Assembly (NCBI GenBank): GCA_963924565.1
Contig: OZ004610.1
Span: 10,354,001 to 10,418,000 of the forward strand
From: Ascidiella aspersa
Taxonomy: Eukaryota
Reading direction: 5' to 3'
Length of the DNA stretch: 64,000 nt
In this document: one piece after another, positions 13,783 through 37,000 of the stretch
Layout: each line of letters begins with the position of its first letter
Position numbering within the stretch: the stretch's first letter is position 1
Made by a program: the position numbers and the translations under genes
The notes under the pieces: generated by a model
What the model saw: only the letters and a program-made list of their open reading frames with translations
What the model was told of the DNA's origin: nothing
Database searches by the model: none

Positions 13783-16700
13783 ATGCTATATGTAGTAAGC
13801 CATTGGTTTGCTGCCTTCCTGGAGGTCGCCCTAGACTATGTGTATTATTATATGGAAGAAGTTATTCATTTCCTTGATTACTACACACCAGGTAAACAGA
13901 ATACATGTCAACATGACAAAAGTTGGCAAAGTTAAAATTTTAGTCCCACACTGTTTTTAGAAATGTAAATAGTTTTTATGTGATTACCAATGAAGCGTGG
14001 AGAGCTCGTAGGGAGCTATAAGAAGGCTGCTGACCCTGTAGACGAGGGCCGACGGCTGCCTAAGTCTCTTACAAGTTCTTAATCCGACTCCAAAGGAGCA
14101 GGCCGCTAGAATACCTGTCCTTAACTTCTTATACTCTAAGCAAAGACAATCCACTCAGTAGATAGTTGCTCTTAGAGTATATTCACAAATCTCAGAAATA
14201 CAGCGATAAACAGAGCGGTGATTCAAGCCGCTATTAGTAAGACGAGTACAGTAGAATGAATTGTCAAATGCGGAAAAGCAATTCGCTAGGCGCGGCGGTC
14301 ACGCGTCAGTGGACAATGGTTACGTGTATAGTGACGTAGAAGTAGGCTAAATGCTACAACCAAAGTTTTTGTGTAATTGGGATAGAGGGTTAAACTTACA
14401 TCATAAAAACAAAATCATGTAGTTAAATTTATTATTGTTCAAACTTAGGTTGGGCCACAACTATTTTACCAAAACATTTGGGGTATTTTAGAAAAACTAG
14501 TGGAAAAATTTGACGTTGTTTGTATATTACCACTAGTCTGTATTCTGTTAGAGGTGAATACCACGAGGTTTGATATGAATTTAGTGCACAACTGAATTTA
14601 AAAACAAAATTTGTTGTGGTTAAGTTAAGGTATTACGTGTAACTGGTTAAGCTTAGTGCATATGTAGGAAACATGAAACCTGAAATGTGCATAGAATTAG
14701 AATGACTGTAGCCGCTGTAAGGTTATTTTCCATCACCATAAATCATACCTTTTGCTTCCTTAATTTTCTTCTTCCAAATAAGCTATGAAATAACACGAAT
14801 TGGAATATATTTAAAAATATATATTTAAAATAATAAATTGACCTGTTTGGTGTACTTTTCTATGTTATCCGGCATTTCTACTTATTTTCTGCTTAAAGTT
14901 TCCCTAGTAATAAAGTACATGTCTTGTTTTTGCAGGATGGAAAGTCTACATTGTTTCACCTTTTGTGCTGCTGTTTTTTATTCTTCCCATGCTTTTGGTT
15001 GTTTATCTTTACCTCAGTGCACTTTTGCTTTTTGTATATCGCCGACGGCATTCTATTTATGATGCTTTTCACAATCACAGTGTGTGGGAGGGTTATCGCC
15101 AAAGTATGGCTACCTTTTGGACTGGACATGGATGGATATGGCATGGTACACAATACACATATTGTATTTTTAATAATCCAAATAAATTGAGTACTTGACA
15201 AAACTTTCTAAAAACCATGTAAAATGTTTATTAGGCTAATTTCACATATTGACCAGTATTAATCTAAAAAAAATTGACATATAATTAGCAACACTTTAAA
15301 AGGTGTTATACCAAGTTCCATTTATTATTTGCTGATTAAATGTACACCACAAACAATCATGATGTATGGTATTCCTAAATAATAATCTAATTTTAGTAGT
15401 TGTTGATCAATGTCATCAGTTTTTGGACTTGTTCAGTGTGGCGTTGCTGACATACAATTTATGTAATTGAATTACAACACATTATGTGTTTATTTCTTGG
15501 TTTATAAAGTAAACCAATTTATTAAAAAAAACTATAGAGGGATCAAAAATTATTTTTAGGCTATGAAGTTGTAGGCATGGAAAACATTCCCAGATCAGGT
15601 CCAGCTCTAATTATCTACTATCATGGTGCTTTTCCAATTGATATGTATTACCTAATTGCGCACATCTATATTGAAAAAGGAAGAACAATTCATAATGTCA
15701 TGGACAAATTTGCTTTTAAAATACCAGGTTGGTTTGATATTTTTATTGACATTCACTCTTTTCAATTTTGTTTTAATTTTGTTTGTTGCCTGTTATCCAT
15801 GATACTTTAATACAGTGTCCAGTATAGTGTAGTTTACAGTGTTCAGTTTTGTCATATGTATCAGGTTTTACATTATCATGCATTATAATAAATGTAACAT
15901 TCTTCTCAGGTCTTTCCAGATTGTTTCGATTTTGGGGATCATTTGAAGGGCCACGAAGTAAAGTGGTTGAGCACCTCAATAATGGTGAAATAGTTTCAAT
16001 AGCCCCAGGTGGTGTCAGAGAAGCACTTTTCAGTGAAAATTATTCCCTGGTATGGGAGAAGCGGCAAGGATTTGCTAAAGCTGCTTTGGAGGCTAAAGTG
16101 GTGTGTATAAATTTTTTTTTTTAATTTATATCTATTTAAAATATCATGCTTACCACTGTACATTAACTTCAGCCAATTCTTCCGATGTTTACTGAAAACT
16201 GCAGACAGGCATTTGACTTTATGAAAACCGGAAAAAGTATGTAATATATTTTACAACTTTTTGAAAAGTTTATGTTTGACACCAACAACATTTTAGATTT
16301 ATTTAAACAACTTTATGAAAAAACACGCTGGCCTATTATGCCGATGTATGGAGGATTTCCAGTAAAATTGAGAACATACATTGGAGAACCCATTCCATAT
16401 GATCCAAAGTTGACACCTCTTGAACTTGTCAACAAGGTTTGCCGGTCATGCTGCATGGTTTCGTTTGTAAGAAAATTGCATAGCTGTACTGTACCTATTT
16501 TGAACGAAATTAAAAATAGTTGAGTGATTTGTTTTTAATTTTTTTGCATGAGTTTATTTCACATAAATTGTTCTATTTTGCAAATAATAAGAATTTAAAA
16601 TTATCAATTTTGGCATTTTTATACACAACATCCTTATACTGCATACCTCACTAAATACTTGCAGCAAACACTAGACTTTTTAAACCTATTTAAAATGGTT

Positions 16701-17385: not shown

Positions 17386-19206
17386 AAAGGCGATGCTGTC
17401 GACGAGCAACAGCTAATGCATTTAGCAAAAATATTTGTTTGCACTTTTTTAACATAAAATCACACTATTTAAACCCATTTCAAACCTCAGCATAAAACTC
17501 CACTAAAAGGCTAATTTATTTTGGTATCAATCATTTCTAAACCCTTTATAAAAGTCCACAATCCACTATTTATAGATTAAACTTTTTTGTATATTGTGTT
17601 TTTTTTATTATTTGCATATACCACAGTATGGTATCAACAATTTTATGGCGTTTTGGGTTTATTTTATCATGCTTTCTTTCAATCAAGTAATGCACCTTAT
17701 GTCTGTAAAAAACAGATTTATATATATATTTATATGCCTCTGATTTGTCCTACACAATTAAGCGTATTTCAATGACTTGGAGACCAACCAGTAAAAATTA
17801 ATTGTATTTTGACATGAAGCATTTCTTCTTTTCTTTTGTTAAATGTATTTTAAAGTGTTTTAATATATACAACTGAACGACATGCAGCTTAATGCTAAAG
17901 TTGTTTTTTTTGTAAGGTTTTAGCTGTCACGTCATTTTAACAAAATGAGATTTTTCCCAAGTAAATTAGTATATTGTGTATTCTGCGTTTGTTTTATTGC
18001 GTATTTTCTGCCATCTTGGGAGAGTGTTGCAATTAATTCATTGTGGTAAAAGTATATGCAACTTTAATTTATGGTCAATAAAAAAAAATACAAAACAACA
18101 TTATGATGAAATAAATTCAGGTTTACTCAAGAAGATCAACTCAGAGGGGATTGCATGGCCTTTTACGTTTTAAATAATAAATTATTTTTCTACAACGTTA
18201 TATTTAATATGATTAATTTAACTTTAGCGAAATAAAAGCAATTAAACATAATTTCTTTTTGCACAAAATATATTATGGATGTGCAATTGTTGAGTGATTT
18301 TGAATTATAAGAAACGTTATGAGACGCACCAATATTGTTTTACCAACAAAAAACAAAAAAATGTTGTGGGTTAAGGTTTGCCTTTATAAACTATGCTTTC
18401 GAAAGTGAAAAAAGGCAATACTTTTTATTTTCTAGAAATTACAAACTGTATTTATCTTAATTTTTTTTTAAATTAATCACTTTTTAATATCAATCCCTCT
18501 GGTTTCACTGCTGTAGCAATACCAAAAATATATACTGCAAAAAAGCTGATACAAACAAAAGTTTTCGGTTCTTTTTTATGTAAATTTACATGACAGGTAG
18601 TATTTGTTTCTTGCTTTATAGTAACACATAAAATTCATACCCTAGTGGCCCTGTAATTTAATTTGGTTCTGTTATGTGTTGTATCGTAACAACCGACTAG
18701 GTTTACGGTTGTCTGTCTATTTGCTTAGACTAGGGGTATTATATCAATTCGTTTGTTCGTTGGTATGAACATATTTCAGTAGCCCAGTTTAACTGTGTTA
18801 ATAAAAATATTGGTGAAAACAATTGTTTAAATTTTAGTAACTTTCCTTCGTCGAAAGTCTGGCCGTCTGACAGCCTTTAAGCGCAACGCCTAAGTCGGAA
18901 GTCGCCAGGCTAAAAATAATTCATCTATTAAAATATTAACAACTTATGCATTTTTGTTATTTGGCTTTGTATCATGGTAGTCAGTGTACAATTTTGCACT
19001 TTTATAGCTATAATTACATGTATGTAGTTATTTAATATGTTTGGGGTCACTAAAGACGTGGATATAGGAATTACTGTGTAGGCAGAAGTCTTAATTTTTT
19101 TAAATAGGACTTTAGTTGGTTATTTTTAGGGTTTGAATGTTGGTTGCATTATCTGAGGTTTATTTCTGATTGTCCAATATGGCAAAAGTGCACCTGTGCC
19201 AGGTTG

Positions 19207-19460
19207 GAAAGTAAGGCCTGTTTTACATTTTACCCCTCAGCCGGGCGCATTTAGTGTAAAATCAACGTAAAATGCGGTCAGCCGCGAAAAATCGCTTAAA
19301 CGCGCAAAACTTTCGTCGCGCTAACGGTTTTCAGTAAAGTACTACATTTTTAGCTGTGCAAATTTTACAAATAAGGTGATTACAGCCGCATAAATTTGGA
19401 CGAAAATGTTATTACAGCCGCGCAATTTCAAGCTGCAAAATCCAAAGTTTGACCAATCCT
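19207..19460 (+). repeat. Dispersed repeat (second copy 51446-51621)
   Basis: Shared gaaagtaaggcctg...aaaatgc.gtcagc.gcgaaaaatc.ct.aaacg.gcaaaacttt...gcaaattttacaaataa. Confidence 0.75.
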
Positions 19461-19736
19461 GTACCCTTATAAAATAAAACAACACCTCAATTTTTTATAA
19501 AGTGAACAAGGAGGTGCACCTTTGATGCATCCAGTCATCCTGATTTTTGTGGTCATTCTCCCGCAAGATCGGTAGAACAACACTTCTATTTGTCATACCA
19601 AATGTTTATATTTTAGCAGGCATATTTGGTTACCTTAATGCTGGACTAGTGAAGCTCAACATTTTGCTAAGATGCGTGTCCCTCTTTGTTTAATTTATTT
19701 GGGAGGTTAATTAACAATGAAAACATAAACAGCATC

Positions 19737-22700
19737 ATGAACCGGTATGTGCAAATGAAGCCCCTTGGTGATGGGACATATGGTTCTGTCATTTTGGGAA
19801 GAAGCAACGAAACTGGAGAAATGGTGGCCATCAAAAAGTGAGATAATGTACCATCTGAGCAACATGCATGTAGTGCTTAGAAACAACTGTCATTTGATGA
19901 CCTCAAATTACATTCACTGGTTGTTTAATGTTTCTGCCACCGCTGTACTTGCAAATCTTAAAAAAAGATGGATCAAGTTTGTTTTATGTTCATATTGTCT
20001 GTATTGATGTATATTATTGTTGTGGATTAGCGGCGCTGAACTTTCAAAGGTTCAGGGTGATTTTTTTGAACCAGTACAAATGCTTACTAATCACCAACAA
20101 AACCTAACAGCACTCGTGATGAAACTCGATTTTGCGCTTCTGCATATTATTATTGAAACAATGCGACAGGTCTTGCGAACTTTTAGCAGAACAAATTGTT
20201 GTTTGTCAAAGTGAATGTGCCTGGTTCTGCAAAAATAAATTAAGTTATAGTGACAATTTACTCTGCTCAAAATAAAAAAATGGCCCATGCGATGTCTGAT
20301 GCTAGAAAAATGCCCCAAACATACTCCCTATACCCAATTTTCAATATATTTTGCTGACTAAGGTATATACTTTTTTACCGTTTTTTACTATGATCTACCT
20401 AAACTATATAGGCTCTGTAGTTACATTGTCTTTAAAGTACTGCATGCTCAATCGTATAAGTGGAAGTTTAATAAAAAATAGAGAATCCAGGCAAATGAAT
20501 CATCTACACCTTGGGTTGTGTATGGTTGTGCATTGTCACAAAAATCGCATTAAGACTTATGATAGGTGATGCTTTCCTAAATGTTGACAGGGACATTATC
20601 TGGTATGGCAGTAGAGTGTGTAGGAAAAAATAAATGTTTAGGGCTGCTTGAACAAGATATTGGATACTTTCTGATGAACAAAATCACATGTTCTATTTGT
20701 TTCCTGCATTTCAACAAGATAATTAATTATGTTATTTCTGACCAATGAGCATTTCTACTGCTGTGTCTTTAAATACCTTTGTAAATTTTATACTAGAAAA
20801 TTCCTATTATTATTTCAATATGATGTGGTATGTAAATGTTACAAAATTTCAGAAAATTCATCATGTATTTCTAAGTTTGTTTCAGTTTGCATGCTCTTTT
20901 CTAACTGAATCGCATAAAGTACATCGGAAGTCATCACAGCTTCAGAAGGGCAGCATTTTTCGAACACTTATGTGTTTGCATCTTTCATTGAATTGCATTT
21001 ACTTTTTTTTTATTTTTGTTAAATCCATTATTGCACTCACATGTTTGGTAACTTATATTAAATGTATTTGTGTGCAAACAGTTTAGCAGTTGAATATGTA
21101 AATCTGAAACTGAATTGGCCATACATTTTTCCGAGACAGCTTTGGGCTCGGAATATTCCATAGAAATTCTTCTGAAAACAACATGTCAGCAGTGGCCATG
21201 CAGACACAAACCAAATTGCCTGTAGGGCCTATTCCGAACTTTCCACAACTGGCTAAAAGCAAGGGCCTATCACGTTATGAATTTATTAAGCAGCTTGGTG
21301 ATGGTACTTTTGGTGCCGTGCATTTGTATCGCACAAAGGACACAAATGAAATGGTTGCCATCAAATTGTAAGTTGAGAGTTTCAAGTGTGTTTAAATGTT
21401 CCCTTTATGGCATTACAATTTAGGTAAAAAAAATTTTGCTTACAAAATTTAACACACAGCGATAAACTTTGTTGGATGTAATTTGTTAGTAATACTTACA
21501 TAATGTTATTGTAAATATATTTATAAACATTTATTAAAATCCACCTACGGCTAAGTTAACATAAAAAATGCAAAAATTGCGACTTCTTGCCTAAAGGGAA
21601 CAATGTTGGCCTGATTTTTTAAGTTGAAATTGAATTTCAAACAATTTAGTTTTGTTCAACCATTCGTTTATTGTCATAATGTGTGCTGTTATTGGGGTTT
21701 TAAATATTTTACGTTAATTTCTTACATCTAATTTATTTTTTCCTGTATTGTGTTAACTATTGCATCAAAAAAGTAGTTTGCATGTTTACTAATTGTAGTG
21801 TGGTATCTAGTTGGCTTTTAATTAGTGTGTCTATATTTTTTCTTGAGATTCATAGCCTAACCTTAACTCATACTTGATTTGTATTGCTTTGGTTTTAATT
21901 TTTTTGTGTTGCAAATGGTGAGTTTTGATTTATCATTGGCTATTGAAGTTACAATGGGTTAAAGGATAACCCACTATATATGTTTGATGCAGAATGAAGA
22001 AAAAGTTCTATAACTGGGAAGAGTGTGTTAATTTGCGGGAAGTTCGGTCACTAAAGAAACTCAATCACATTAATGTTGTCAAACTTAAGGAAGTTATAAG
22101 AGAAGATAACCAACTTTACTTTGTGTTTGAGTACATGAAGGAGAACCTATACCAATTAATGAAGGGCAGGTATGTTTCTTTAATGTTTTAGTACCATGTA
22201 GAATTAGAACCAAAATGTTCTAAGCAAAACTGATATTAATCGAGTTAAAACAAATTATTTTTAGTAAAAGCCGTTTCCCTTCAATGGACTTCAATGGACG
22301 ATTTTATTTTTGGTTAAACAGGTTTCTCAATGTTCCTTTAGTATTTTTCATTGAAAACTGGCAGATACCGGTTCTCAATATTGTTCTAGTAAACTGTTTA
22401 ATTTCCAGTTTACTAAAATCAAACCAAGAAAGTTTATAAAATTATTTGTCAAATATTCTCATGATTTATTGATCAACAACGTATATAGTAAATAAAACAT
22501 GACTAAGTGAGTTTCCATGGAATTTTGAACAGGTGTATTTTTTGCCTAGGGCTTGTCCTTTGAGGCGTTTGTATGGTTCCAATTTCATTGCGGACGCATA
22601 GTGTTTGTGTATGATAAGCTTTTGTTTCCATTAAGTTTATCAGGGCTATTCATTTCACCAGACAGAGAACAAAAGGCCATAATATGTCAATTGTGCACTT

Positions 22701-25700
22701 GTAAAAATAATAGCTATCTCTTGAACTAAAGACAATGCTATGCCCTCGAGAATAATAACGGTTGATTTCTGAAAGGTCGATGTAATTGTAATTTATAATT
22801 GTTTGATGTTTTATCACAGCTGTTTTATTGTTTCTAGTTTCCAGTTGTACCTTTTTATAATTTATAATACTTCACATATATAGTCACAAAAGTGCAAAAT
22901 TATACACTGACTACCATGATATTTTATAACTCTTCATATATATTGTAAGTCTGTAAATTTCTTACATTTCTTAATATTCCTTTGTATTTTTGTTTAAAAT
23001 TTGTTTAGTATATGCCTCACTTGTTCTAAGATTATAAAGCACTGTGTTATTATTGCCTAAGAATGGGTCGTTGTTTTCTCATTAATTATTCATGATGCAT
23101 CAATTCACTCACACACACGCACTGCTCTCCCACCAAAACATGTTTAAAAATATAAGGTTAGACCCTTTCTACCCTGACCTTAAGGTAGACCGAACCAGTA
23201 TAATAAAATATGTATGTGTTTTTAAGCATACTCCCAATCTCTTGTCTAATGTTTAAGCTTTACATTTTTTATTACATCTTTGCTATGATATTTAAAATGT
23301 TTTATGTTAATAGTTCTTGGTAGGCTTTAAGCTTTAAAATGCCCTGCACTTTTTATCATAGTAGGGTAAAGTATATTTCATAAACCTATATTTAGGGTTA
23401 AGTACTGGTAATCCTACTGCGTCTTCACACTAATATGACCAATGAGCTATTTTTTATATCTTTTTAGTAGTCTCTAATGTTTTTACCTTGGTATATATGA
23501 CATAAATATTTTTAACAAATTTTAAGAAGTTTGATATAGAATATATACCTATTTAAATCCTATTCCGCTTACCTCAATTCAAAAGTCACAACTTATTTGC
23601 TTTGCGTCGTCGCATTTCTATTATTTGAGAGACCCGTGTTTGCAGTTGCTAAGGCTCTTAAGTGTGTTTGTCTTGTGGCGGTGACAGATTTGTCATCAAA
23701 CAATGGTCAATGTCAGCTTAGAATATTACTGATTTTTTCTTGCAAAACAGGATCACAATGTTGTTGTTTATTTTTCTAATTTAATAGAAGTATTTTCATA
23801 AGTTGGAACTCAATTTAGATACAACATCTTCAACTGAAAAATTCACCTTGTTCTTATCATCAACACTTTATGTTGTTTCAGGGACAAATACCTTCCAGAA
23901 CCTTCAATCAGAAACATGGTATACCAAGTACTACAGGGTATGGCTTTCATGCATAAACATGGCTTCTTCCATCGCGATATGAAGCCTGAAAATCTGCTGT
24001 GCATGGGCCCTGAACTGGTGAAAATTGCCGATTTTGGCCTTGCAAGAGAAATTCGTTCCAAGCCCCCTTATACAGATTATGTCTCAACTAGATGGTAATT
24101 TTTTTGTAATTGATATAAATTTCATTGCTTTACCCCTGAATGTTTTTTATCGGTTGCCAAAAATATGTATGTTTAATTTGAGGCATCCTGGTGGGAACAT
24201 AGTTGAAATAAATAGTAAAGCATTCAGGCATTATTACATTTTCAAAGTTTAAATTAAAGCTTATAATTTATGAATTTGTGTTATTATGATCCATCTCTAT
24301 ACAGTAACAATAAATTCCTTGCTCTAAAAAGTTAAGAGCTCACAACTTGATAAACCTTTGGCACACACCCCAAATTTTAAAACAGATTGCCTTCTGTTAT
24401 GTTTTAGGTATCGAGCCCCAGAAGTTCTTTTAAGATCATCCAACTACAGCTCTCCAATTGACATCTGGGCAATAGGTTGTATCATTGCTGAGCTGTACAC
24501 CCTAAAACCTCTATTTCCTGGCACTTCTGAAATGGATGAAATCTTTAAACTCTGTCAAATCCTCGGCCCACCAACCAAGGTATAGTGCACGTATCTCATA
24601 TTTGTATACCTCATATTTGCAGTATTGTTTAAGAAAAATAACAATATGCTGTTAACTAAAATTTAAAGTGATATGTGATCTACCAGTAATAAAAAAATCA
24701 ATTTTATAACTAATGGAATATCTATTGTTTTCGCAAATAAATGACGATATGAATAATATGTGTCTGAACGTTTGTGCTTTGACCTTACCAGACACTTATC
24801 TCATATTTGTATACCTCATATTTGCAGTATTGTTTGCAAGGAAAATAACAAAAGGTGTTAATTAATTAAACTTGATGTTTTTGTTTGTGCTTTGTAAATT
24901 ACCAGTAAAAAAGAACAATTTAATAACTTGGCATTGGAATATCTATTGTTATCTAAAATAAATGACAATATGTAGAATATGTTTCTGAACGTTTGTGCTT
25001 TGGCCTTCCCAGACTGACTGGCCCGAAGGCCACAATCTTGCCAACCAGATGAATTTCCGGTGGCCACAGGTGACTGGAGCCAGTCTCAAAGCAAAAGTTC
25101 ACAATGCCAGTCCCGAGGCGCTCCAGTTGATTGTTGACATGCTCCAATGGAACCCAAAGAAACGGCCCACTGCTAGCCAAGTGAGTCCAATGTCGCTGAG
25201 CACTATGCTGTTGGTTTAAGGTATTGATTTTTTCTCAGAAAAATGTATAAGATAAATCCGGAAAACAGCCATTAGGCATTTACAGAATGATTAAAATTGA
25301 ACGCACGATTTGTTATTAGATTACAGAGCATCAGCCATTGCTATTATAAAAACAAACACATAAAAAGGTGCATGTTACTAGAGTTAATAATTTCAGAAAA
25401 TAAAATCTTCTACTATATGCCAAAAGTCATGAACAAACATCGATTTTTGTTACACATCACATTTATGCCGAAATGGTGCGCTTATCACCTATGATTAAAA
25501 TTATGGACATGCCAGTCAACGCCTACAAAACACGGCCGTTGTTTTTTACCAGGCACTCCGCTATCCTTACTTCAGCGTCAACCAGGACCTGGGTCCAAAA
25601 ATAACGCAACAACAAGCGCTGCATAAGCTCTACGAGCAGAAGCAATTCGGTAACATCAGCCCGCCTGCGCTACCGGCTGCCACCCAGGAACAACCTCCTT

Positions 25701-28700
25701 CCCTTGATGTGAGAAAGCGCGTTTCACCCGCGCAGCCGGCGGTTCCAAAGCACCAACAGAAACCTCATCCTTCAATTCATAAGGCCGCCGAGCCCGCAAG
25801 GGAAAACGGCGACGCCAGACACAGGCCCAACGGTATCCGCAAATCTTTACCCCCTGCTAACAAGTGGAATCCCAAGCCGCCGCCGCCGAAAGTCACCGAT
25901 GACCTCGACGACGATTTCAATTTAGATTTCTCGCTGGAACTCGACAAGTTTCCATCCAAGGAGAGCGCTGCCCCAAAGTCGAAACACGCCCCCGAAAAGC
26001 CAGCCGAGCACAAGCACGCAACGAACTTGGCCGACCCGGACGGCTTCCTGCAAGAGCACAAGCAGCAAGACGCCAAGCTTCCCGGCGACGCGAAAGTCAA
26101 GTCGCGCCCACATCGGCCCACGCACCTCTCCACGTTCAAAAGCCTGCTGGACGACGACGAGGTCGACTCGATCATCGGCAGCGGTAGTCCGCCGAGGATG
26201 CTGCATCGCGGCGCCTCGATCGAGCGAAAGGACAGCAGTGGAAGCCGGGACACCAGTGCAATGAGGTTCCGCTCCAGCGTCGCCAAACACGCCACCTACT
26301 CGCGGCTGCCAAACCCCGGCGCCGCCAAGCCCGTGGCCAACGGCGGAGTGCACGGAATGGCGCTTAAGAGCAACAAACCACCTGCTAGAGCGGGCGGCTA
26401 CCATCACAACTCCGGAACGAACTACGATCCTTTCTCGTTCGACTCCGACTCAAACCGAAACAACAATAACAGCGGGTTCGATTTTAATCACAACCCCCAC
26501 GCCCACGTCCACAAACCACCGATGGGCCGACGCCCCTTGGGTCAGCGAAACGCCCACTGGCACGACACCTTCTCGGACAATAAGGCAAGTGAGCCGCTGC
26601 CACCCCTCGGAAAACAGTTGCACCATATGGATGAAAGGTAAATACTACAATTTATACCAATTATTGAGATGTGTACAGCTTTATGGGTTGAGTGTCGTGT
26701 TTTGTTTATTTATTATTCTGTGATAAGGTCTACATTTAATTGTTTAGGTTAGAGCTATCCCCATTGGTTAACTTTCAATCGAACACGTGTTATTAGTGAA
26801 ATATTGCATTGTTGTATTGTGTCTGTTTGCTTGCCACCCCCGTATATAAATAAATGTACATTCCAATTCCTAGGTTTTTGCTTTGCCGAATTATTTTCGG
26901 CGATCTTAACGCACAATATCTTCGCAGCTCGACCAAGACAGACAGCATAGGCAGCAAGCCAAGCGGGCGCAGAAGATGGGTGACGGTGCCCGGGGTTAAC
27001 AACAAGTTAACTTCTCTTGAAGATTTCGGCCTCGACATCAAACGACCACCTAACGCGAGGTTCGGCGGTAAAAAGAAGGGAGACAATATGGACTACCTGT
27101 TCGGGTTAGAAAGAAGCTATACGTTTTTTTTTCATTTTAGAGAATACGAAATCCCAGTCGCGCGATTCATAGATTTTAAATTTGTTTTCGAGAATTTTTT
27201 GTGCTTGTTGAAACGCATGGACAATTGGAATTCAATGCCAAGGTTTTCGTAACAATTTAATTAAAAAATTTAAGTCGATAATATCAAAATATTTCCGTGT
27301 TTTATCGTTTAAAAAGTATTTGTCGATTATACGTAAAGTTCTGGCTGTTATGGTTTTGTCGAAATTGTTTTTCTGTGTAAAAATGAAAAAAATTGGGATT
27401 TAAACAGCACCGACTCGCATTTTAGCGTAATTTCGAGAGCACAAGTTCTGATTAAAGTGCGGGCGGTTTGTTTCGTACGTTTAAATTGGTAAAACTTCGC
27501 TCCGCAGAAGTCCCGAGTCCAAGTACGCGCCAAGGCAGCGAGACAGTGGAGTTCCGTCGTCCAAAGTTTCACCCCAGCGTCTGTCTGGCAAAAAGAACTA
27601 CTACTTGTCCAGTAAGTCGTCGGCCGTTTTCGAGTTGTGATAGGGCCCGTATACAAAGGCTATGGATGTTGTTTTTACGCGTCTCGCGAATGATGCGCGC
27701 CTCATTTTTTGTGTGTATTGTAGGCTTGAAAATGAAAGGCAACGAGGGCAGCGCCTGGACCAAACAAAGCACTTACCAGTCACCGTACAAACAAGGTTGG
27801 TGACAGGATTAAGTTTGCCGAAAGTAACTCGGGATTGCGCCGGTTTACCGAAAAGCCTATTTTTGTCTTTTTGATTAATTTTCTTAATAATTTCTGTTCT
27901 TTGTTAGGTGCCACACAATAAGAAACCGTTACAAAAGCGTAGCCTTTCGACCTTTTGTGTTTACTAAGATTATTATAATACGCGTCGCGCAAGTCTCAAA
28001 ATATTAAAATTAAACAGGTTTTTGACTCATTTGTTTGTCCGAGCTTCTGTGTTTTTTCCTTTTCTCTTTTCAATCCACATCTATGTGCATCAGCGATTCT
28101 AATATTTCTTTGCCCATCGTCCTGTAGTAACACAAACGAAGGAGTATTCCGTCGGTGCACCTTACTTACCGTCCTTTGCTACCAAAAAAGAAGTGGGATC
28201 AGCTGGGCAGCGAATTCAGCTCCCCGTGGCTCCTGCAACCAGTAAGTTGCACCTCTTTCTCTTTTAAATATTGTAATGTGTACATGTTTTTTTTTAGGTT
28301 TGGCTTTAGTGATCACTAAAAGTTTTAGGGGATATCTTTTTCACGTTTTAAGAGTCCGACATTTCATCATACCCCGGGACACACCGTTTTTCAGTTTTTA
28401 AATTCGCTATTTCATCATTCACAGAACTGTAGCTACAGCTATATTTTGGGAGACCTTTAGAGATTTGGTCTTTTTTAACACCATAAAAAGCACTGACTGC
28501 GTATATAAAAAAAAACGACTAACCATAAGCGGAAATCTAAAGTAGTTAACGCACCCCATCAGATGTTTGGATTTATTTTGTGCCAAAAATATTATTAATT
28601 CTCGCTCCACATTATTCCTTGTTATTTATGTAATGCTATTACATTTAAAGTCATCAATGTTTATTTAAAATTCACTGCCACGCCCTAAGACAATCCCTTG

Positions 28701-30711
28701 CCAATCAATATAGCTTTTGTTGGATGGCCGTGTGTTTTTCGCTCACATGCAAATACCCGCCATTTCGCGGCATTACAAGATTCGTTTTAAAAGAAACACA
28801 TTTTAGATCTTGCCATCCTTTTAAACACTTACGTCACCGGGTCTCCGAGTGTTCGCGTTACACCTTAAAGCAAACCCTAGCGCCGGCCTTTGTTCAGCTT
28901 TGGTGACGCACATGGCCCAACCCCAATTAAAACCGCAGCGACGCTAAAGCTCCGTACCTTCCTTTTTTCCAGGCTTCAGCACGTGGAAATCCCGCGCTAT
29001 GGGCTCCCAACTTCAGCCGGCCGTGACCAACAAGACGAGTCCACCTACTATGCGACCTCAGGCCGTCAACGACCATATCGGCCGGACCGATTGGAAAGCC
29101 AAGTGAGTGACCTAAAAATCATTTCTCAACCGCATTGCTCGGCCGTGCACCGAGATTAATCGCAGATTAACTTGATGTGCTTTAGTTGATTCGCGTGTTC
29201 CCGTTTGGCACTTGAGTAGCCAATCGTAGTCCAGCTTTAGCACTTTTATGTCGCTAGGTAATGAATTTTTAAGTCGCAGGAAATGAGACCCAATATGCGT
29301 CGACTACTCTTTTCGAGTGGCCACGTATACTAACCCATCACAACTTTAAAAAATCGCGCCTGTTTAATACTTATCCTTAATTTTTCATTCGGTTAGGAAA
29401 AATGGCAGAACAAAGTAGACCTCAAAATAAAAATTCTACCGAGTACATTCAAAGTATCATACTTTAAGCCATGCTGGCTAAAGTAACACAGTCACTGTTT
29501 TTGAATATACGCGAGTGTGCGCTGTTCGTCAAAGGCAAAAAGGGATCAGTGGACCAGTATTTAAAGCAATTACTTTTTAAACCACTTGAGCGCATGTTAT
29601 AATCGGATCACTTGCGTTGAATGACCTTAATTATTTTCGATTGTCCCATACCAGTGGTATACACTGTAGTATAGTATTTGACCGTTTCTCCATGAGGGTG
29701 ACATCGTTGTTTTTGTTTGCAAACCACGTAGCCATTGCTGATTAACAATTCGCAATGATGATTTGGACGACATTTAAGTAGAACGTCGAGTTATTGTAAT
29801 GTGGCGTCACGTTCAAGGCATCATTGTAGTTCGTCGACCTTTTGTCTTATTTGTGAGTTGTGACACACGCGCGCACCACGGTTGTCTGAGTGGCAACCTG
29901 GGTTTTGGCCAGCTGGGCACTTAACTAAAGGGCAGACGTCGTCATTTTGAAGTGCCCTTAATTTGCAGTATTCTCCTGTTTGAAATCCCACGCTAATCTT
30001 GGTATTTTCATGAAATATATACAATGCTTAAACGTACGCCCTTAAAATAATGCGAGTTTGTGAAATTACATATGTCTGTTGCCAGTGGTTCTTAACCTTT
30101 TTAGCTTACGGACCGTAAAACTTTCAAAACAAGTTTTGCGGACCGGTGAACCTTCAAACATCAAGTCGACCCAAAATGTAATTACGACGAAAGTATATGC
30201 AACTTAAAAGCAAAAAATGGAAACGTCAATTTAATAAGCAATTTGCTTCTGTCTTTTTAAAATCATACGTGTTTTACATGGTTCATTGAAGTTTTTCACC
30301 TACAACTGGTTTTAAAGCTTATGACTTAAACGAGTTGTAGCCTACTACAACACTTGCACCATTGTGACGAACAATAAAGTCCAAAGTAGACCATAACTCT
30401 ATGTTGCGTCACAATGCAGCAAATTACGGAACTAGCGAAGTTCTACATTTGATGGACAAGGTTTTAACATCTTACAACTAAGATAAAACATTGTAATATA
30501 TTTGGCGGACCGGCAGGAAAGTTGGTGCGGACCGGCGGTTGGGAACCACTGTGTTATACCATACGTGTACTGTACAACTGTACATATACAATACACTAAA
30601 AAGGCTCATCAAATTATCGCGTTGGTGCCTATTGTGCAATTGTGCCGTTTTGCATGTTTTATTTAACAGTCGTTTTGTTTTGATATTTTCAGGTATGGAG
30701 GTCCAAGGTAG
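19737..30711 (+). CDS. MAK/CILK1: MAK/ICK (CILK1, DYF-5) family ciliary Ser/Thr kinase, canonical isoform
   Basis: Exons 19737-19837, 21993-22169, 23882-24094, 24408-24579, 25013-25180, 25553-26637, 26928-27104, 27508-27611, 27724-27795, 28128-28241, 28973-29102, 30693-30711. [55 protein letters not shown] (TDY). Tail motifs [21 protein letters not shown] and [13 protein letters not shown]. Confidence 0.93.
21183..21367 (+). CDS. MAK/CILK1: Alternative first coding exon of the MAK/ICK kinase (duplicated subdomains I-II with a 28-aa extension)
   Basis: [61 protein letters not shown]+TT|gtaagt. Same phase 2 as 19737-19837; joins the acceptor at 21992 in frame. Confidence 0.85.
24592..25012 (+). 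repeat. Tandem duplication (~200 bp x2) forming most of a MAK intron
   Basis: tatctcatatttgtatacctcatatttgcagtattgttt...ggaatatctattgtt...ctgaacgtttgtgctttg.cctt.ccag at 24592-24791 and 24797-25012. Confidence 0.85.
30083..30551. mobile_element. hAT-like MITE in the last MAK intron
   Basis: Ends cagtggttcttaacc / ggttgggaaccactg; subterminal cggaccg repeats; TSD not preserved. Confidence 0.65.
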
Positions 30712-34043: not shown

Positions 34044-37000
34044 TCAGGTCAGGGAGAGCTCTTCCCGGGACTTGAAGAGTAGCGCGGCGTTGTAGATTTT
34101 AATGGCGGGACCGAGTTTGATTTTCAGCTGCTTGGTGAGGTCGTCCTGTGTGAGAAGGAGCAGCGCGTCGCCGTCAATCTCGTCGCGGACGAAGGCGTCG
34201 ATGTTGCCGGCGCTGTCGGTCAGGACGCCCACGAACGTCGCGGTGGTCTTAATGTCCCACTTGGACACGTCGCTGGCGCGTAGCGAATCGACGCCGGGCA
34301 GCAGCTGGACCACCTGTTCCCAACACTCTGGCAGCGGGGTCTGGGTGTGGGGGTAAACTGGGGCGGGAAGGGGGGTGTGGTTTACCGGTGCGTGTTCGCT
34401 GGACAGCCGCAAAGACTTTTGTCGCGAGATGGACTTGCGCGACGCGGCTGCCATCTTACCATTTCCGTTCGGGAGTGCGCTGATCTTCCGCGGGCGACCC
34501 CTCTTTGGTTTGCGGCTGACGCCCGTCAGTTGACCTACGACAGGCGCGCGCGATGAATTGTCCTTGAGGTGGTCCTGGGTCGGAGGCTTTCCCTCGTCGG
34601 AGGAGTTGCCGCTGAGGCTGAACCGGTTAAGCGGCAGCTCGCGGGCAAGGTTCTGCGGCGAGTAGGGACAGCCGTGCTCGCTGAAGTGCTTCTTGTGGTA
34701 GAAGTGCTCGCGCGACAAGTTAACGTGACCCAGACCGTAGCAGCCCGGTATCGTGCAGCCCTTGCGTAGCGACGAGCCGGTGAAGTCCCGCGCGTCGATG
34801 GGCGGTTGCAGCAGGTGCCCAGTTTTTAAACACCAGGTGGGCGGATGCAGGTCCAGGCTGTCGGCGTCCATCCAGTAATCGAAGAGCTCACTCCATCCGT
34901 CAAATCGCACCTTGACACGGCACTCATCGGTGTCGACAATGCTTGCCACACGTACAAGAATCGGGTTGCGTAGGTCGACAACCTCCAGCTTCATCCCTGG
35001 AGTGAACAGGTCGCTGGGGTGGTAGGCGGACGCGAAGCTCTCAGATCGAGCAGCGCGCGACTTTGTATTAGCCAGGTACTTCGGCCAGGAGAAGGGCCAT
35101 TGCGTGTCGTAGTTGGGTGGCGACGAGAGCTCCTTGCCGTGCTGCGTACACCAGCCGAGCGGGTGCAGGAAGGGCGAGTTGTCGCGCGCCCAGAAGTCGT
35201 ACTCGCTCTGCCAGCCGTCAAAGTGAACCAGCACGCACTCGCCGACGGCGTCCACCACAGTAGCCACGCAGGTCAGCTCGCTGTGCTGGCGATCGACCGC
35301 CTCCAGCTTGTCGCCGATACGGAAGCGCGTCGCGTTCTCGAAGATGGCGGGCGCGAACATAGCGTCGGGCGTGGCGGCCGGGTGGAAGCGGCGAAACTCA
35401 TTCGGCGTCAAGGGCGTCTCGTCGTTCCGCGGCGACACGAGCGACAAATGACGGCCGGTGCGCTCGCAGAAACCGCAGGGAAAGAGCAGCGGAGAGTCGG
35501 CGTTCACCCACTGGTCGTAGCACGCGTATTCTCCGTCGATGTGCAGGCGAAGGCGGTAGCCTTGGATTTGTGCGATGCGCATGCGGCAAATGTGCGACTG
35601 GTGCGCGGCGTCCACCGCTTCCACGAACCAGCCCACCTTGAAAGGGTTGGGGCGCGTCGGGAACGCGGGCCGGCCAGTGGTCTCCTGAAACACGGCGTCC
35701 GGAATCGGCGCGGCTCCCTCGCGCTCCAGGTACTGACGCCAGGAGAACTTTTTGCTCGGCGCCGCGATGATGCCTTGAGCGTTGCTATTGTTGTCACTCT
35801 GTTGTTGCTGTTGCTGGGCGCCCGTTGTCTTGGTGACGGCGGCGGTCGAGTGCGCATGCGCGTTCGGAAGTCGAATGGTCATCTTCAGGTCGCCGGCAAC
35901 TGAAAGATCGTATGCAGAAAAATATTATATATACGTCGAGATTTGTAATTGCGATTACGTTTCAGGTAGAAACAGTAAATTTATTTAGTTGTATAAGTGA
36001 AGTATATAAACACTGCTAAGACTGTAAATTAAATTATAAACCTTTCAAGTGAATGAAAGATGCACACAGATATGTGTGTTAACAACTGTGATCTAGCCCT
36101 TCTGAAGCCGTTTTGACCAACGATTACGGCTTACGTATCATTAGTACATCGAAAGCCATTGCACACTCACCGAATCTGTCGATCAATGATGCAAGCCGAG
36201 CAGACTAGAAAAACAACTAGCCTGCAGTAACCGTGGCTCTACCAACTGAGCTACACAGGCTCAGAGAGGAGAGAGTCGAAACAACCATATGCCCTTTCAT
36301 TGATTGACAGATTCGGTCGATGGCTTTTCGGTGTACCTCTTGAAGTGCTTTTACTTAAAACTAAGTTTTAAAATAGGGCGATGTTGCTGTTACAAAAAAG
36401 AGCAATGTCGTTACCAAGTAAGAAGCCTTGGTTCAAAACTTCAAATTAACAAAAACACAAAACATAAAGTACAAATCGCGTGCGCAAACACAACAAACCG
36501 ACTTTTCATTGCAAGACAAAACAGAATGGCTTACCTGAAACTTCGGGATTGGGCGCGGCTTCGTCGTCGTCGTCCGTGGACTCGCTGCGCGGAGTCGAAA
36601 ATGCGCAAGTGACCGGCGCACCTGAGAGCCTCCGCTGCTTGGTGGCCGACGTCAAGAGGAGAAGTTTTTCCTCGCCGCCTACGCCACTCCTGAGCGCCCC
36701 CTCGTGGCGACGCTTGGCGCCGTTGTGCGCGCTCCGCTCGACGCAAGGGTCGCTGCACCTCGACATTTCGCTGTCGGTGTTTGGTTTGTTAGTCGCGGCG
36801 CCTGGTGGGATGTCGTTCGATTTTGCGACGTGGGGTTGCAGCCGATTAGTTTCTGTTTCTGTTTCTTTCGCTGGAGAAGCCGCGCTCGAAAAGGGCTGCT
36901 GCACAATGGCGACGGCCACGGTTGAAGCGTCTTTGGCCGGCTGCAAACCGAATTCTTGCGGCACGATGGCAGACGGTTTTGAATCTAATTGTCTGGGCGG

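What the first reader, a model, noticed from the sequence alone, without database searches (positions are those of the whole stretch)
19737..21367. MAK/ICK kinase has two alternative N-lobe exons: Tyr15 versus a natural Y-to-F variant
Seen: exon 1a (19737-19837, missed by the ORF track) encodes [33 protein letters not shown]. Exon 1b (21183-21367) encodes a 28-aa extension plus [33 protein letters not shown]. Each has its own ATG, ends in phase 2 at a strong donor and joins the same acceptor (21992). Established: Tyr15 of the Gly-rich loop is the inhibitory phosphosite in CDKs and is reported as inhibitory in ICK/CILK1; vertebrates have separate MAK and ICK genes. Inference: one gene makes two kinases by exon duplication and promoter choice, one insensitive to Tyr15 inhibition. 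This could serve sperm flagella versus somatic or sensory cilia.
Basis: partly seen in the sequence, partly recalled or inferred. Interest (0 to 1): 0.8.

Follow-up and report, generated by a model that had tools for sequence, protein, structure and literature searches.

The report
Two first exons, one cilia kinase
A sea squirt's single MAK/ICK-type cilia kinase gene has two alternative first coding exons, one keeping a regulatory tyrosine and one carrying phenylalanine instead, and the same arrangement already appears in public gene models of other sea squirts.

Summary
Exon 1a (19737-19837, Tyr15) and exon 1b (21183-21367, 28-aa extension, Phe) are both open. Each has its own ATG and a phase-2 GT donor upstream of one acceptor (21992/21993). 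The genome, an ascidian close to Phallusia, has one such gene.

The architecture is conserved and already annotated. Clavelina lepadiformis LOC143448998 and Styela clava LOC120333933 each have 1a-type and 1b-type isoforms joined to the same exon 2. Own 1a matches Clavelina 1a at 30 of 33 residues. Own 1b matches Phallusia 1b at 31 of 33.

Exon 1b looks like the major form. RNA depth on 1b (6.2) is close to that on exon 2 and stops at its donor. All intronless transcript-like contigs of relatives are 1b-type. RNA over 1a mostly runs past its donor into the intron. The splice joints of the RNA run were not displayed, so neither junction was seen directly here.

Styela's 1b keeps Tyr, so Tyr-to-Phe came after the duplication. 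Promoter choice, insensitivity to tyrosine kinases and a sperm-versus-soma split are untested. Verdict: new member of a known kind, moderate interest.

The parts
19620..19736 (+). Putative 5' leader of exon 1a, following an acceptor-like ...ttttagcag| (AG at 18-19 of 196xx, i.e. 19618-19619)
   Evidence: Sequence. Plus-sense RNA reads of run X5 cover 19629 (4 of 4 reads carry a variant there), and the bin 19588-19784 has depth 5.59 while 18800-19193 has 0. Whether this is a transcription start or a trans-splice acceptor was not resolved.
19737..19837 (+). Exon 1a coding part: the ancestral MNRY-type N-lobe exon with Tyr15, the VAIK lysine and a phase-2 donor AA|GTGAGA
   Evidence: It matches Clavelina 1a at 30 of 33 residues and Xenopus ICK at 26 of 33. 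A C>A variant at 19790, seen in 8 of 8 RNA reads, is synonymous (codon read).
19838..20700 (+). Proximal intron 1a, transcribed in continuity with exon 1a in run X5. It contains AATAAA at 20234, 20271, 20470 and 20629
   Evidence: Depth by bin is 5.36 (19785-19981), 5.9 (19982-20178), 2.59, 2.28, 0.95, then 0 at 20770-20966. There are 6 reads at 19938 against 8 at 19790. Ending at these signals is inferred, not shown.
21090..21182 (+). Putative 5' leader of exon 1b. Acceptor-like AGs lie at 21088-21089 and 21138-21139, and the in-frame stop codon just upstream of the open frame lies at 21111-21113
   Evidence: Sequence. The bin 20967-21163 has depth 1.53 against 6.23 in the next bin.
21183..21367 (+). 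Exon 1b coding part: a 28-aa N-terminal extension plus an N-lobe exon with Phe in place of Tyr15, and a phase-2 donor TT|GTAAGT
   Evidence: RNA depth is 6.23 at 21164-21360, 0.17 at 21361-21557 and 0 up to 21951. It matches Phallusia 1b at 31 of 33 residues and Clavelina 1b at 28 of 33. pN is 0.09 and pS 0.79 against L020.
21993..22169 (+). Shared exon 2 (acceptor cag|A, donor CAG|GTATGT)
   Evidence: It is 98% identical to Phallusia mammillata 'ICK'. RNA depth is 6.82 in the bin 21952-22148. It is the only strong copy in the genome.
23882..24094 (+). Exon 3: HRD and DFG motifs and the activation loop with TDY
   Evidence: The open frame reads ...[10 protein letters not shown]...[22 protein letters not shown]. 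Pfam Pkinase E 3.1e-21. RNA depth 9.13.
24408..24579 (+). Exon 4
   Evidence: Splice sites are. Pfam Pkinase E 7.7e-12. Ten RNA reads leave at 24579 and continue with the first letters of exon 5 (table 7).
25013..25180 (+). Exon 5, the end of the kinase domain
   Evidence: Splice sites are. The start matches the loose-end consensus of the 10 RNA reads. tblastn to the Phallusia and Clavelina proteins.
25553..29103 (+). C-terminal non-catalytic part in several exons: about 25553-26617, 26923-27129, 28112-28243 and 28975-29103. Boundaries were not refined
   Evidence: Colinear tblastn matches to Phallusia P0049 residues 310-865. Open frames.

Best explanation
This is the single MAK/ICK (CILK1-type, RCK family) kinase gene of an ascidian close to Phallusia. 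Its first coding exon was duplicated before the three living ascidian groups split. Each copy kept its own start codon and a phase-2 donor, and each can join the same exon 2.

Exon 1a is the ancestral form. Its product starts MNRY, is colinear with human ICK, and has Tyr15 and T157-D-Y159 at the human positions.

Exon 1b is the derived, ascidian-specific form. It adds a 28-residue N-terminal extension. In the lineage of Ciona, Phallusia, Clavelina and this species it has Phe where Tyr15 stood.

Exon 1b gives the major mRNA. RNA that starts at exon 1a either splices 19837 to 21993, giving the canonical Tyr15 kinase, or, as mostly seen in the one RNA sample, runs on into the intron. There it probably ends at intronic poly(A) signals.

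Shown here: the exons, their conservation and selection, the orthologous isoforms in other species, and the RNA depth profile. Inferred: the two junctions in this species, the use of the poly(A) signals, and that the Phe form cannot be switched off through this residue (Phe cannot be phosphorylated).
For: - Exons, phases and the shared acceptor.
- One gene in the genome.
- Orthologous isoform pairs of one gene:
  - Clavelina LOC143448998: X1 and X2 are 1b-type with Phe; X3 and CAK8690734, CAK8690736 and CAK8690737 are 1a-type with Tyr.
  - Styela LOC120333933: X1 and X2 are 1b-type; X3 and X4 are 1a-type.
- The Ciona XP_002124422.3 and Phallusia CAB3255183.1 proteins are 1b-type with Phe joined to exon 2.
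- Fourteen full-length ORFs in 5 clusters lie on contigs barely longer than the ORF, so they are intronless. All 14 are 1b-type joined to exon 2. They are P0048, P0050, P0170, P0171, P0051, P0175, P0177, P0179, P0181, P0053, P0183, P0184 and P0052... [P0052 completes the list with the twelve before it plus P0048].
- Identities over 33 residues: own 1a to Clavelina 1a 30, to Xenopus ICK 26, to own 1b 19. Own 1b to Phallusia 31, Clavelina 28, Ciona 24, Styela 1b 21.
- Tree: the 1a-plus-canonical versus 1b split has support 79/98. All 12 Phe-bearing 1b rows form one clade with support 99/95.
- pN 0.09 against pS 0.79 for 1b versus L020.
- RNA depth: 1b 6.23, falling to 0.17 just past the donor. 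About 8.6 within exon 2 (my arithmetic from the bins). 1a region 5.4-5.9, continuing past the donor.
Against: - No splice joint of the RNA run was displayed for 19837>21993 or 21367>21993. Table 5 was filled by repeat joints of the DNA runs and says '22 more are not shown'. Both junctions in this species therefore rest on depth and on orthology.
- Depth at 19982-20178 (5.9) equals that over exon 1a, so productive 1a splicing was at or near zero in that sample.
- Only about 6% of one RNA run of unknown tissue was read, at depth 5-9.
- The Clavelina and Styela isoforms are computed gene models. I could not see their RNA support.
- No transcript-like contig of 1a type was found (0 of 14).
- In the metagenome relative L019/L020, no 1a-type exon lies within 6.4 kb upstream of 1b or in the 4.2-kb intron after it.
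- The 1a/1b split in the tree has only 79% bootstrap support on 33 columns.
Confidence: 0.75

Rival explanations
1. Exon 1a is not a productive coding exon in this species. The RNA over it would be a short, unspliced, prematurely ended transcript or an upstream decoy carrying a 34-codon ORF. Only exon 1b would make kinase.
For: - In one search depth does not fall at the 1a donor: 8 reads at 19790, 6 at 19938, and bins of 5.36 and 5.9 after the exon.
- Depth then declines stepwise across four AATAAA signals to 0 at 20770-20966.
- Zero of 14 transcript-like contigs of relatives are 1a-type.
- Only 1b-type proteins were found for Ciona and Phallusia in the clusters read.
Against: - Own 1a is 30 of 33 identical to Clavelina 1a and 26 of 33 to Xenopus ICK, with an intact ATG, G-loop, VAIK lysine and GT donor. 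An unused exon would not stay so after so deep a split.
- Two annotations of Clavelina (XP and CAK records) and RefSeq of Styela join 1a-type exons to exon 2.
- The one variant seen in 1a is synonymous.
- One RNA sample at depth 6 cannot exclude a minor or tissue-limited isoform.
Confidence: 0.15
2. The choice between 1a and 1b is not made by two promoters. One primary transcript would be made, and the choice would fall on which acceptor upstream of the two ATGs receives the spliced leader (or a shared upstream non-coding exon).
For: - Both exons are preceded by a similar acceptor-like ...tttagcag| about 117 and 93 bases before the ATG, at 19619|19620 and 21089|21090.
- Earlier notes of this scan report spliced-leader genes and leader-tagged retrocopies in this genome (not tested by me).
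- Trans-splicing of many ascidian mRNAs is established knowledge (recalled).
Against: - No leader sequence was seen on reads. The loose-end table shows only repeat-derived ends near 19245-19442, with 233 more not shown.
- RNA depth is 0 at 20770-20966, between the 1a read-through and exon 1b, and 0 at 18800-19193 upstream of 1a. That fits two separate starts better than one long precursor. At depth 1-2, though, a precursor could be missed.
Confidence: 0.3
3. The Tyr-to-Phe change in exon 1b is a tolerated, functionally neutral substitution. The two isoforms would differ in function, if at all, through the N-terminal extension or through expression, not through loss of Tyr15 control.
For: - Styela clava and three unnamed 1b-type sequences (P0052, P0018, P0019) keep Tyr, so the exon pair was kept for a long time without the change.
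- Phe also occurs in a catfish ICK-like protein (P0065) and in MNRY-type first exons of unnamed organisms (L021-L023, L026, L029).
- The reported effect of Tyr15 phosphorylation on ICK is partial, about 30% (PMC6410813, section 7 passage).
Against: - Once gained, Phe is invariant in all 12 rows of the derived clade. The 1a exon keeps Tyr in all 3 species where it was seen.
- Tyr is found in 112 of the 120 best MAK/ICK hits, so the site is normally constrained.
Confidence: 0.45

Closest known systems
Clavelina lepadiformis LOC143448998, isoforms X1/X2 versus X3 (XP_076805119-121; CAK8690734-37)
   Same: It has the same architecture and the same residue contrast. A 1b-type first exon with an N-terminal extension and GDGTFG, and a 1a-type MNRY exon with GDGTYG, both join the same exon 2. 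Clavelina 1a is 30 of 33 identical to own 1a, and Clavelina 1b is 28 of 33 identical to own 1b.
   Different: It is another ascidian order. These are computed gene models without a name or description. I found no paper on them.
Styela clava LOC120333933, isoforms X1/X2 versus X3/X4
   Same: Two alternative first coding exons of the 1b and 1a types join one exon 2.
   Different: Both exons keep Tyr. Its 1a is more diverged (22 of 33). X1 and X3 carry an extra 19-residue insert after exon 2 that I did not find here.
Vertebrate MAK and ICK/CILK1
   Same: They belong to the same kinase family. The 1a product is colinear with human ICK, with Tyr15, Y156 and T157-D-Y159 at the same numbers (my count). 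The Clavelina 1a plus exon 2 stretch, which is 30 of 33 identical to own 1a, is 81-85% identical to vertebrate MAK/ICK. Tyr15 of ICK is phosphorylated by FGFR3, which partly inhibits it (PMC6410813).
   Different: Vertebrates have two genes, each with one MNRY-type first coding exon with Tyr. Of the 120 best hits, 112 have Tyr, and the only vertebrate with Phe is a catfish ICK-like protein. Here one gene offers two N-lobe exons.
CDK1 Tyr15 control by Wee1/Myt1 and the non-inhibitable Y15F mutant (recalled, not from a call)
   Same: It concerns the same position of the Gly-rich loop. Phe removes the phosphate acceptor.
   Different: In CDK1 the Phe is a laboratory mutation. Here it is a natural, conserved exon variant, and the upstream tyrosine kinase in ascidians is unknown.
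Amphibalanus amphitrite 'MAK' model P0054
   Same: The N-lobe exon also occurs twice in one locus. Two MxRY...GDGTYG...VAIKR units lie in tandem at the N-terminus.
   Different: Both units are read into one protein model, which may be an annotation error. Both have Tyr. In the tree the two barnacle copies fall apart from the ascidian 1b clade, so this was an independent duplication.

Membership tests
RCK kinases (MAK / ICK-CILK1 / MOK) | Protein kinase catalytic domain | tested here: met
   Searched exon by exon against Pfam PF00069: 1a E 1.9e-4, 1b E 6e-4, exon 2 E 2.3e-8, exon 3 E 3.1e-21, exon 4 E 7.7e-12. The hits cover profile positions 1-219 in order.
RCK kinases (MAK / ICK-CILK1 / MOK) | TDY dual-phosphorylation motif in the activation loop (Thr157, Tyr159 of ICK; PMC10958382 section 2.2.2 passage; PMC6410813 figure legend) | tested here: met
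   Exon 3 reads ...[13 protein letters not shown]. Counted from the 1a start through the exon bounds, the residues are T157, D158 and Y159.
RCK kinases (MAK / ICK-CILK1 / MOK) | Closest named relatives are MAK/ICK proteins | tested here: met
   Exon 2 is 98% and exon 3 96% identical to 'serine/threonine-protein kinase ICK [Phallusia mammillata]'. The orthologous Clavelina 1a plus exon 2 is 81-85% identical to vertebrate and hemichordate MAK/ICK.
RCK kinases (MAK / ICK-CILK1 / MOK) | Long non-catalytic C-terminal domain (PMC6678984, abstract as listed) | tested here: met
   A 380-residue open frame at 25499-26638 plus further exons to 29103 is colinear with Phallusia residues 310-865 at 41-82% identity. 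Only 2 proteins matched the 380-residue frame alone.
RCK kinases (MAK / ICK-CILK1 / MOK) | Control of cilium or flagellum length; activation by CDK20/CCRK | not testable with these tools
   No functional data exist for any ascidian. No paper was found.
Alternative (mutually exclusive) duplicated first coding exons | Two homologous exons, each with its own start codon, with the same donor phase, upstream of one acceptor | tested here: met
   Both donors are in phase 2, and the exons share 19 of 33 residues and 63 of 101 bases.
Alternative (mutually exclusive) duplicated first coding exons | Both junctions to the common exon present in RNA of this species | tested here: inconclusive
   In one search the depth profile fits 21367>21993: depth is 6.23, then 0.17, then 0, then 6.82. 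For 1a the reads mostly pass the donor.
Alternative (mutually exclusive) duplicated first coding exons | Both forms present as isoforms in related species | tested here: met
   Clavelina and Styela gene models. For the 1b type there are also 14 of 14 intronless transcript-like ORFs. No transcript-like contig of 1a type was found.
Alternative (mutually exclusive) duplicated first coding exons | Separate promoters for the two exons | not tested
   No 5'-end data. Read starts and leader sequences were not visible.

The most novel reading that the evidence does not exclude
Ascidians have kept two versions of the ATP-lid exon of their only MAK/ICK kinase since before their orders split. In the Ciona-Phallusia-Clavelina lineage the major version lost the Tyr15 phosphate acceptor. 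Bulk ciliary-length kinase activity would then be uncoupled from tyrosine-kinase (FGFR or Src type) input. The ancestral Tyr15 version would survive as a minor form, with its output set by a contest between splicing at 19837 and premature polyadenylation in the intron. That would be a natural, isoform-level switch for tyrosine control of a ciliary kinase.
Probability: 0.15. Interest if true: 0.65.

Novelty: new member of a known kind. Interest (0 to 1): 0.4.

Why it matters
Tyr15 control of ICK/CILK1 by FGFR3 links growth-factor signalling to cilium length. It rests so far on vertebrate cell work with a partial effect (PMC6410813).

Ascidians offer a natural comparison inside one gene. An ancestral Tyr15 N-lobe exon and a derived Phe exon have both been conserved across ascidian orders. 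Styela is a built-in control, because both of its exons keep Tyr.

Ciona and Phallusia embryos are easy to electroporate and to edit. The question of whether Tyr15 phosphorylation matters in vivo could therefore be asked with isoform-specific knockouts.

For genome annotation, the point is that exon 1a is short enough to be missed, and that the 1b form is the main one. The architecture itself, duplicated alternative first exons, is ordinary and is already present, unremarked, in public gene models.

Tried and rejected
1. **Direct junction evidence.** The one read-laying run included two DNA runs. Their many joints in a high-copy repeat at 19217-19416 filled table 5, so the RNA run's joints were not displayed ('22 more are not shown'). 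I could use only depth, variants and one loose end.

3. **Metagenome contigs of a relative (L019, L020).** The 1b-type exon, exon 2 and exon 3 were found. No 1a-type exon lay within the 6.4 kb available upstream or in the 4.2-kb intron. This is inconclusive, because the contig starts there and its introns are several times longer than here.

4. **Third homolog search with the Clavelina 1a isoform, residues 1-93.** All 120 rows listed were proteins of vertebrates and other non-ascidian animals. The 1a isoforms sit inside 90% clusters represented by 1b isoforms, so they cannot surface. The search was uninformative for 1a transcripts.

5. **C-terminal exon search.** Only 2 hits, neither full length.

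6. **Rfam on 19000-24000 at E up to 0.1.** 0 matches, so no known small RNA explains the RNA over intron 1a.

7. **Literature.** The following term pairs gave 0 papers each: 'ascidian' with 'male germ cell-associated kinase', 'Ciona' with 'CILK1', and 'Ciona' with 'intestinal cell kinase'. A broader search on mutually exclusive exons, glycine-rich loop and alternative first exon listed 10 of 387 papers, none on this by title or abstract start. Subscription journals are not covered. Supplements are closed, and the phosphosite tables of PMC6410813 may lie there.

8. **Rejected readings.**
   - Two haplotypes: the exons are only 62% identical.
   - Two tandem genes: there is one exon 2 in the genome.
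   - Both exons in one mRNA: joining 1a to 21090-21367 adds 278 bases, which is not a multiple of three, so it would shift the frame (my arithmetic).
   - The ends of 5 molecules at 20073 and the starts of 5 at 20465 as an intron: GT follows 20073 but no AG precedes 20465. A 165-base skip between 20080 and 20246 in the DNA runs suggests an indel polymorphism instead.

9. **Spliced model.** I ran no search with a joined model. All searches were made exon by exon.
Full report
**What is in the sequence**

Exon 1a ends AA|GTGAGA and exon 1b ends TT|GTAAGT. Both donors are in phase 2. The next coding exon starts at 21993, after ...tgatgcag. The split codon becomes Lys after 1a and Leu after 1b.

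If left unspliced, both frames stop within two codons. The two exons share 63 of 101 bases and 19 of 33 residues. Seven of the 19 conserved codons differ synonymously, so the duplication is old.

Downstream I placed:
- exon 2 at 21993-22169,
- exon 3 at 23882-24094,
- exon 4 at 24408-24579,
- exon 5 at 25013-25180,
- exon 6 from 25553.

These come from the splice-site flanks and from colinear tblastn matches to two ascidian proteins. Those matches carry the gene on to about 29103.

Searched exon by exon, the pieces cover Pfam Pkinase positions 1-219 in order. Exon 3 carries HRD, DFG and the TDY activation motif. Counted from the 1a start, the residues are Tyr15, Tyr156 and Thr157-Asp-Tyr159. 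These are the numbers given for human ICK (PMC6410813 passages; PMC10958382 passage). I did no search with a joined model.

**One gene, and which genome**

The window is part of a 308.6-Mb assembly in 75 contigs. In a six-frame search of that assembly, each first exon finds itself and then the other, at 58-59% identity. Every further hit is the first exon of another kinase. Exon 2 has one strong copy, and the next hits are 50% identical or less.

My own results agree. Exon 2 is 98% and exon 3 96% identical to the Phallusia mammillata 'ICK' protein.

**Relatives**

A profile-free search of 1.84 billion representatives with exon 1b alone found 34 proteins at E up to 0.001. Among them were:
- short ORFs of 65-79 residues that end right after ...AIK, as genomic exons do, at 61-79% identity;
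- two full-length proteins, namely Ciona intestinalis XP_002124422.3 'ICK' and Styela clava LOC120333933 isoform X2.

Reading the cluster members showed that Styela has four isoforms. X1 and X2 start with a 1b-type exon, and X3 and X4 with a 1a-type exon (MNKY...). All four continue with the same exon 2.

A second search, seeded with the Ciona N-terminus, added Clavelina lepadiformis LOC143448998, Phallusia mammillata CAB3255183.1 and several unnamed full-length ORFs. In Clavelina:
- X1 and X2 (and CAK8690735) are 1b-type with GDGTFG;
- X3 (and CAK8690734, CAK8690736, CAK8690737) is 1a-type with GDGTYG;
- both types join the same exon 2.

Without the contrast, it also stands in a third order.

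**Orthology and direction of change** (over the 33 core residues)

| Comparison | Identical residues of 33 |
|---|---|
| own 1a vs Clavelina 1a | 30 |
| own 1a vs Xenopus ICK | 26 |
| own 1a vs Styela 1a | 22 |
| own 1a vs own 1b | 19 |
| own 1b vs Phallusia 1b | 31 |
| own 1b vs Clavelina 1b | 28 |
| own 1b vs Ciona 1b | 24 |
| own 1b vs Styela 1b | 21 |

A maximum-likelihood tree of 28 such cores separates the 1a-type exons plus canonical animal MAK/ICK exons (12 rows) from the 1b-type exons (16 rows). Support for that split is 79/98, which is weak to moderate on 33 columns. The tree puts all 12 Phe-bearing 1b rows in one clade with support 99/95. The four Tyr-bearing 1b rows (Styela, P0052, P0018, P0019) fall outside it.

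Exon 1a is therefore the ancestral exon and 1b a derived duplicate. The duplication predates the split of the three groups, and Tyr-to-Phe happened once, later.

The 1b extension is loosely conserved. It starts M-[S/T]-x-S-A-[V/I], has a His/Gln-rich patch, and has KGL before the core. This supports translation from the 21183 ATG.

Against the 1b-type exon of a metagenome relative (L020), 19.0 of 24.0 synonymous sites differ but only 7.0 of 78.0 non-synonymous sites do. The flanking intron shows no similarity. This is strong purifying selection.

**RNA in this species**

One RNA run (X5, 2026, stranded, tissue unknown, about 6% read) was laid on 18800-24700 together with three other runs of unrecorded kind, which I take for DNA runs. 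All reads over the gene have the first mate on the minus strand. This fits a plus-sense RNA in the usual stranded library.

Around exon 1b and exon 2:
- Depth is 6.23 in the bin that holds exon 1b (21164-21360).
- Depth is 0.17 in the next bin. That equals about five reads over the last seven exon bases.
- Depth is 0 up to 21951.
- Depth is 6.82 in the bin holding exon 2, which is about 8.6 within the exon.
- This is the profile expected if most exon 2 is joined to 1b.

Ten reads leave exon 4 at 24579 and continue with the first letters of exon 5. The RNA is therefore spliced mRNA, and two of my exon bounds are confirmed.

Over exon 1a the picture differs:
- Depth is 5.59 (19588-19784), then 5.36 and 5.9 in the two bins after the donor.
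- There are 8 reads at 19790 and 6 at 19938.
- Depth then falls to 2.59, 2.28, 0.95 and 0 by 20770.
- Four AATAAA hexamers at 20234, 20271, 20470 and 20629 fit that stepwise fall.

I infer that in this sample RNA starting at 1a mostly fails to splice at 19837 and ends inside the intron. This is inference from bins at depth 2-6.

The table of joints did not display any row for the RNA run, and the call could not be repeated. Neither junction was seen directly.

**Transcript evidence from relatives**

Fourteen full-length ORFs in five clusters lie on contigs only slightly longer than the ORF. One example is 874 residues on 2927 bases. The clusters are:
- P0048;
- P0050, P0170, P0171;
- P0051, P0175, P0177, P0179, P0181;
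- P0053, P0183, P0184;
- P0052.

The same coding region spans more than 9 kb with many introns here, so these contigs must come from RNA. That is an inference. All 14 are 1b-type joined to exon 2, and none is 1a-type. This agrees with 1b being the main form. It leaves the 1a form supported only by gene models and by its strong conservation.

**The Tyr/Phe point**

The literature claim is sound. FGFR3 phosphorylates ICK on Tyr15. Modelling puts the phosphate at the ATP pocket, and activity fell by about 30% (PMC6410813, abstract and section 7 passages).

Phe cannot accept phosphate, so the 1b product of this species cannot be regulated that way. Whether ascidian kinases use Tyr15 at all is unknown.

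Points against a special meaning:
- Styela keeps Tyr in both exons.
- Phe also appears in a catfish ICK-like protein (P0065) and in MNRY-type first exons of unnamed organisms in metagenomes (L021-L023, L026, L029).

Points for constraint:
- 112 of the 120 best hits have Tyr. Seven of the 8 Phe cases are the ascidian-type 1b clade.
- Within that clade Phe is invariant.

**How the choice is made**

Both exons are preceded by an acceptor-like ...tttagcag| about 93-117 bases before the ATG. Earlier notes of this scan report spliced-leader genes in this genome (not tested by me). Alternative trans-splicing is therefore a live rival. Zero depth between the 1a read-through and exon 1b, and upstream of 1a, leans towards two separate starts. 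The depth is too low to decide.

**Comparison and verdict**

By all sequence features tested, this is a member of the MAK/ICK family. It is also a member of the known class of duplicated alternative first coding exons.

The same exon pair is already in computed annotations of Clavelina and Styela. I found no paper on it (subscription journals and supplements not covered).

What is new:
- the instance in this genome;
- the recognition that the pair is ancient and that 1a is the ancestral exon;
- that 1b is the main form;
- that Phe arose once inside the 1b lineage;
- the hint that 1a output is limited by intronic termination.

Interest is moderate. It gives a clean natural system for testing Tyr15 control of a ciliary kinase, but no functional claim is yet supported.

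Noticed in passing
window 19194-19450: A very high-copy repeat lies directly upstream of exon 1a. Summed contig depth is about 14,000 and 35,000 in two runs that hold nearly the whole stretch, against about 50-100 on the flanks. It shows many internal joints, and RNA reads fall on both strands. Its family was not identified.
   Followed up: no
window 23331-23921: Plus-sense RNA depth of 2.2-3.1 covers the last 550 bases of intron 2 before exon 3 (exon depth 9.1), while the first 1,160 bases of that intron have 0. This could be an internal start, an alternative exon or partial retention. Styela isoforms X1 and X3 carry a 19-residue insert at this exon boundary.
   Followed up: no
window 20073-20465: The two runs that hold nearly the whole stretch each have a contig that skips 165 bases (20080 to 20246). 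Five RNA molecules end at 20073 and five begin at 20465. No canonical AG precedes 20465. This is probably an indel polymorphism in intron 1a.
   Followed up: partly
window 34044-35882, minus strand: An uninterrupted 612-residue ORF with three MBT repeats, a C2HC zinc finger and a SAM domain (L3MBTL-like) sits in a block of 56-65% G+C within a 37% G+C window. An intronless, GC-rich gene is odd for this genome and might be a retrogene.
   Followed up: partly
window 21228: A C>A polymorphism in one DNA-run contig would change Pro16 to Thr in the 1b N-terminal extension. It is absent from the 7 RNA reads there.
   Followed up: no
L004/L010 (G000:C9:25514418-25514726 region): A CDK5-like kinase is encoded by a single 293-residue open frame without introns.
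   Followed up: no
protein P0054 (Amphibalanus amphitrite 'MAK'): A barnacle gene model contains two N-lobe first-exon units in tandem in one protein. This is probably an independent duplication of the same exon, possibly two alternative exons merged by the annotator.
   Followed up: no
protein P0065 (Ictalurus furcatus ICK-like isoform X4; cluster of 28 members): This is the only vertebrate among the 120 best hits with Phe at the Tyr15 position. Related catfish proteins (P0108, P0125) have Tyr.
   Followed up: partly
window 15538-16520 and 44162-45300, plus strand: The neighbouring genes, judged by eye from the open frames, are an acyltransferase-like gene upstream and a PUF60-like RRM gene downstream. 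They were not checked against any library.
   Followed up: no
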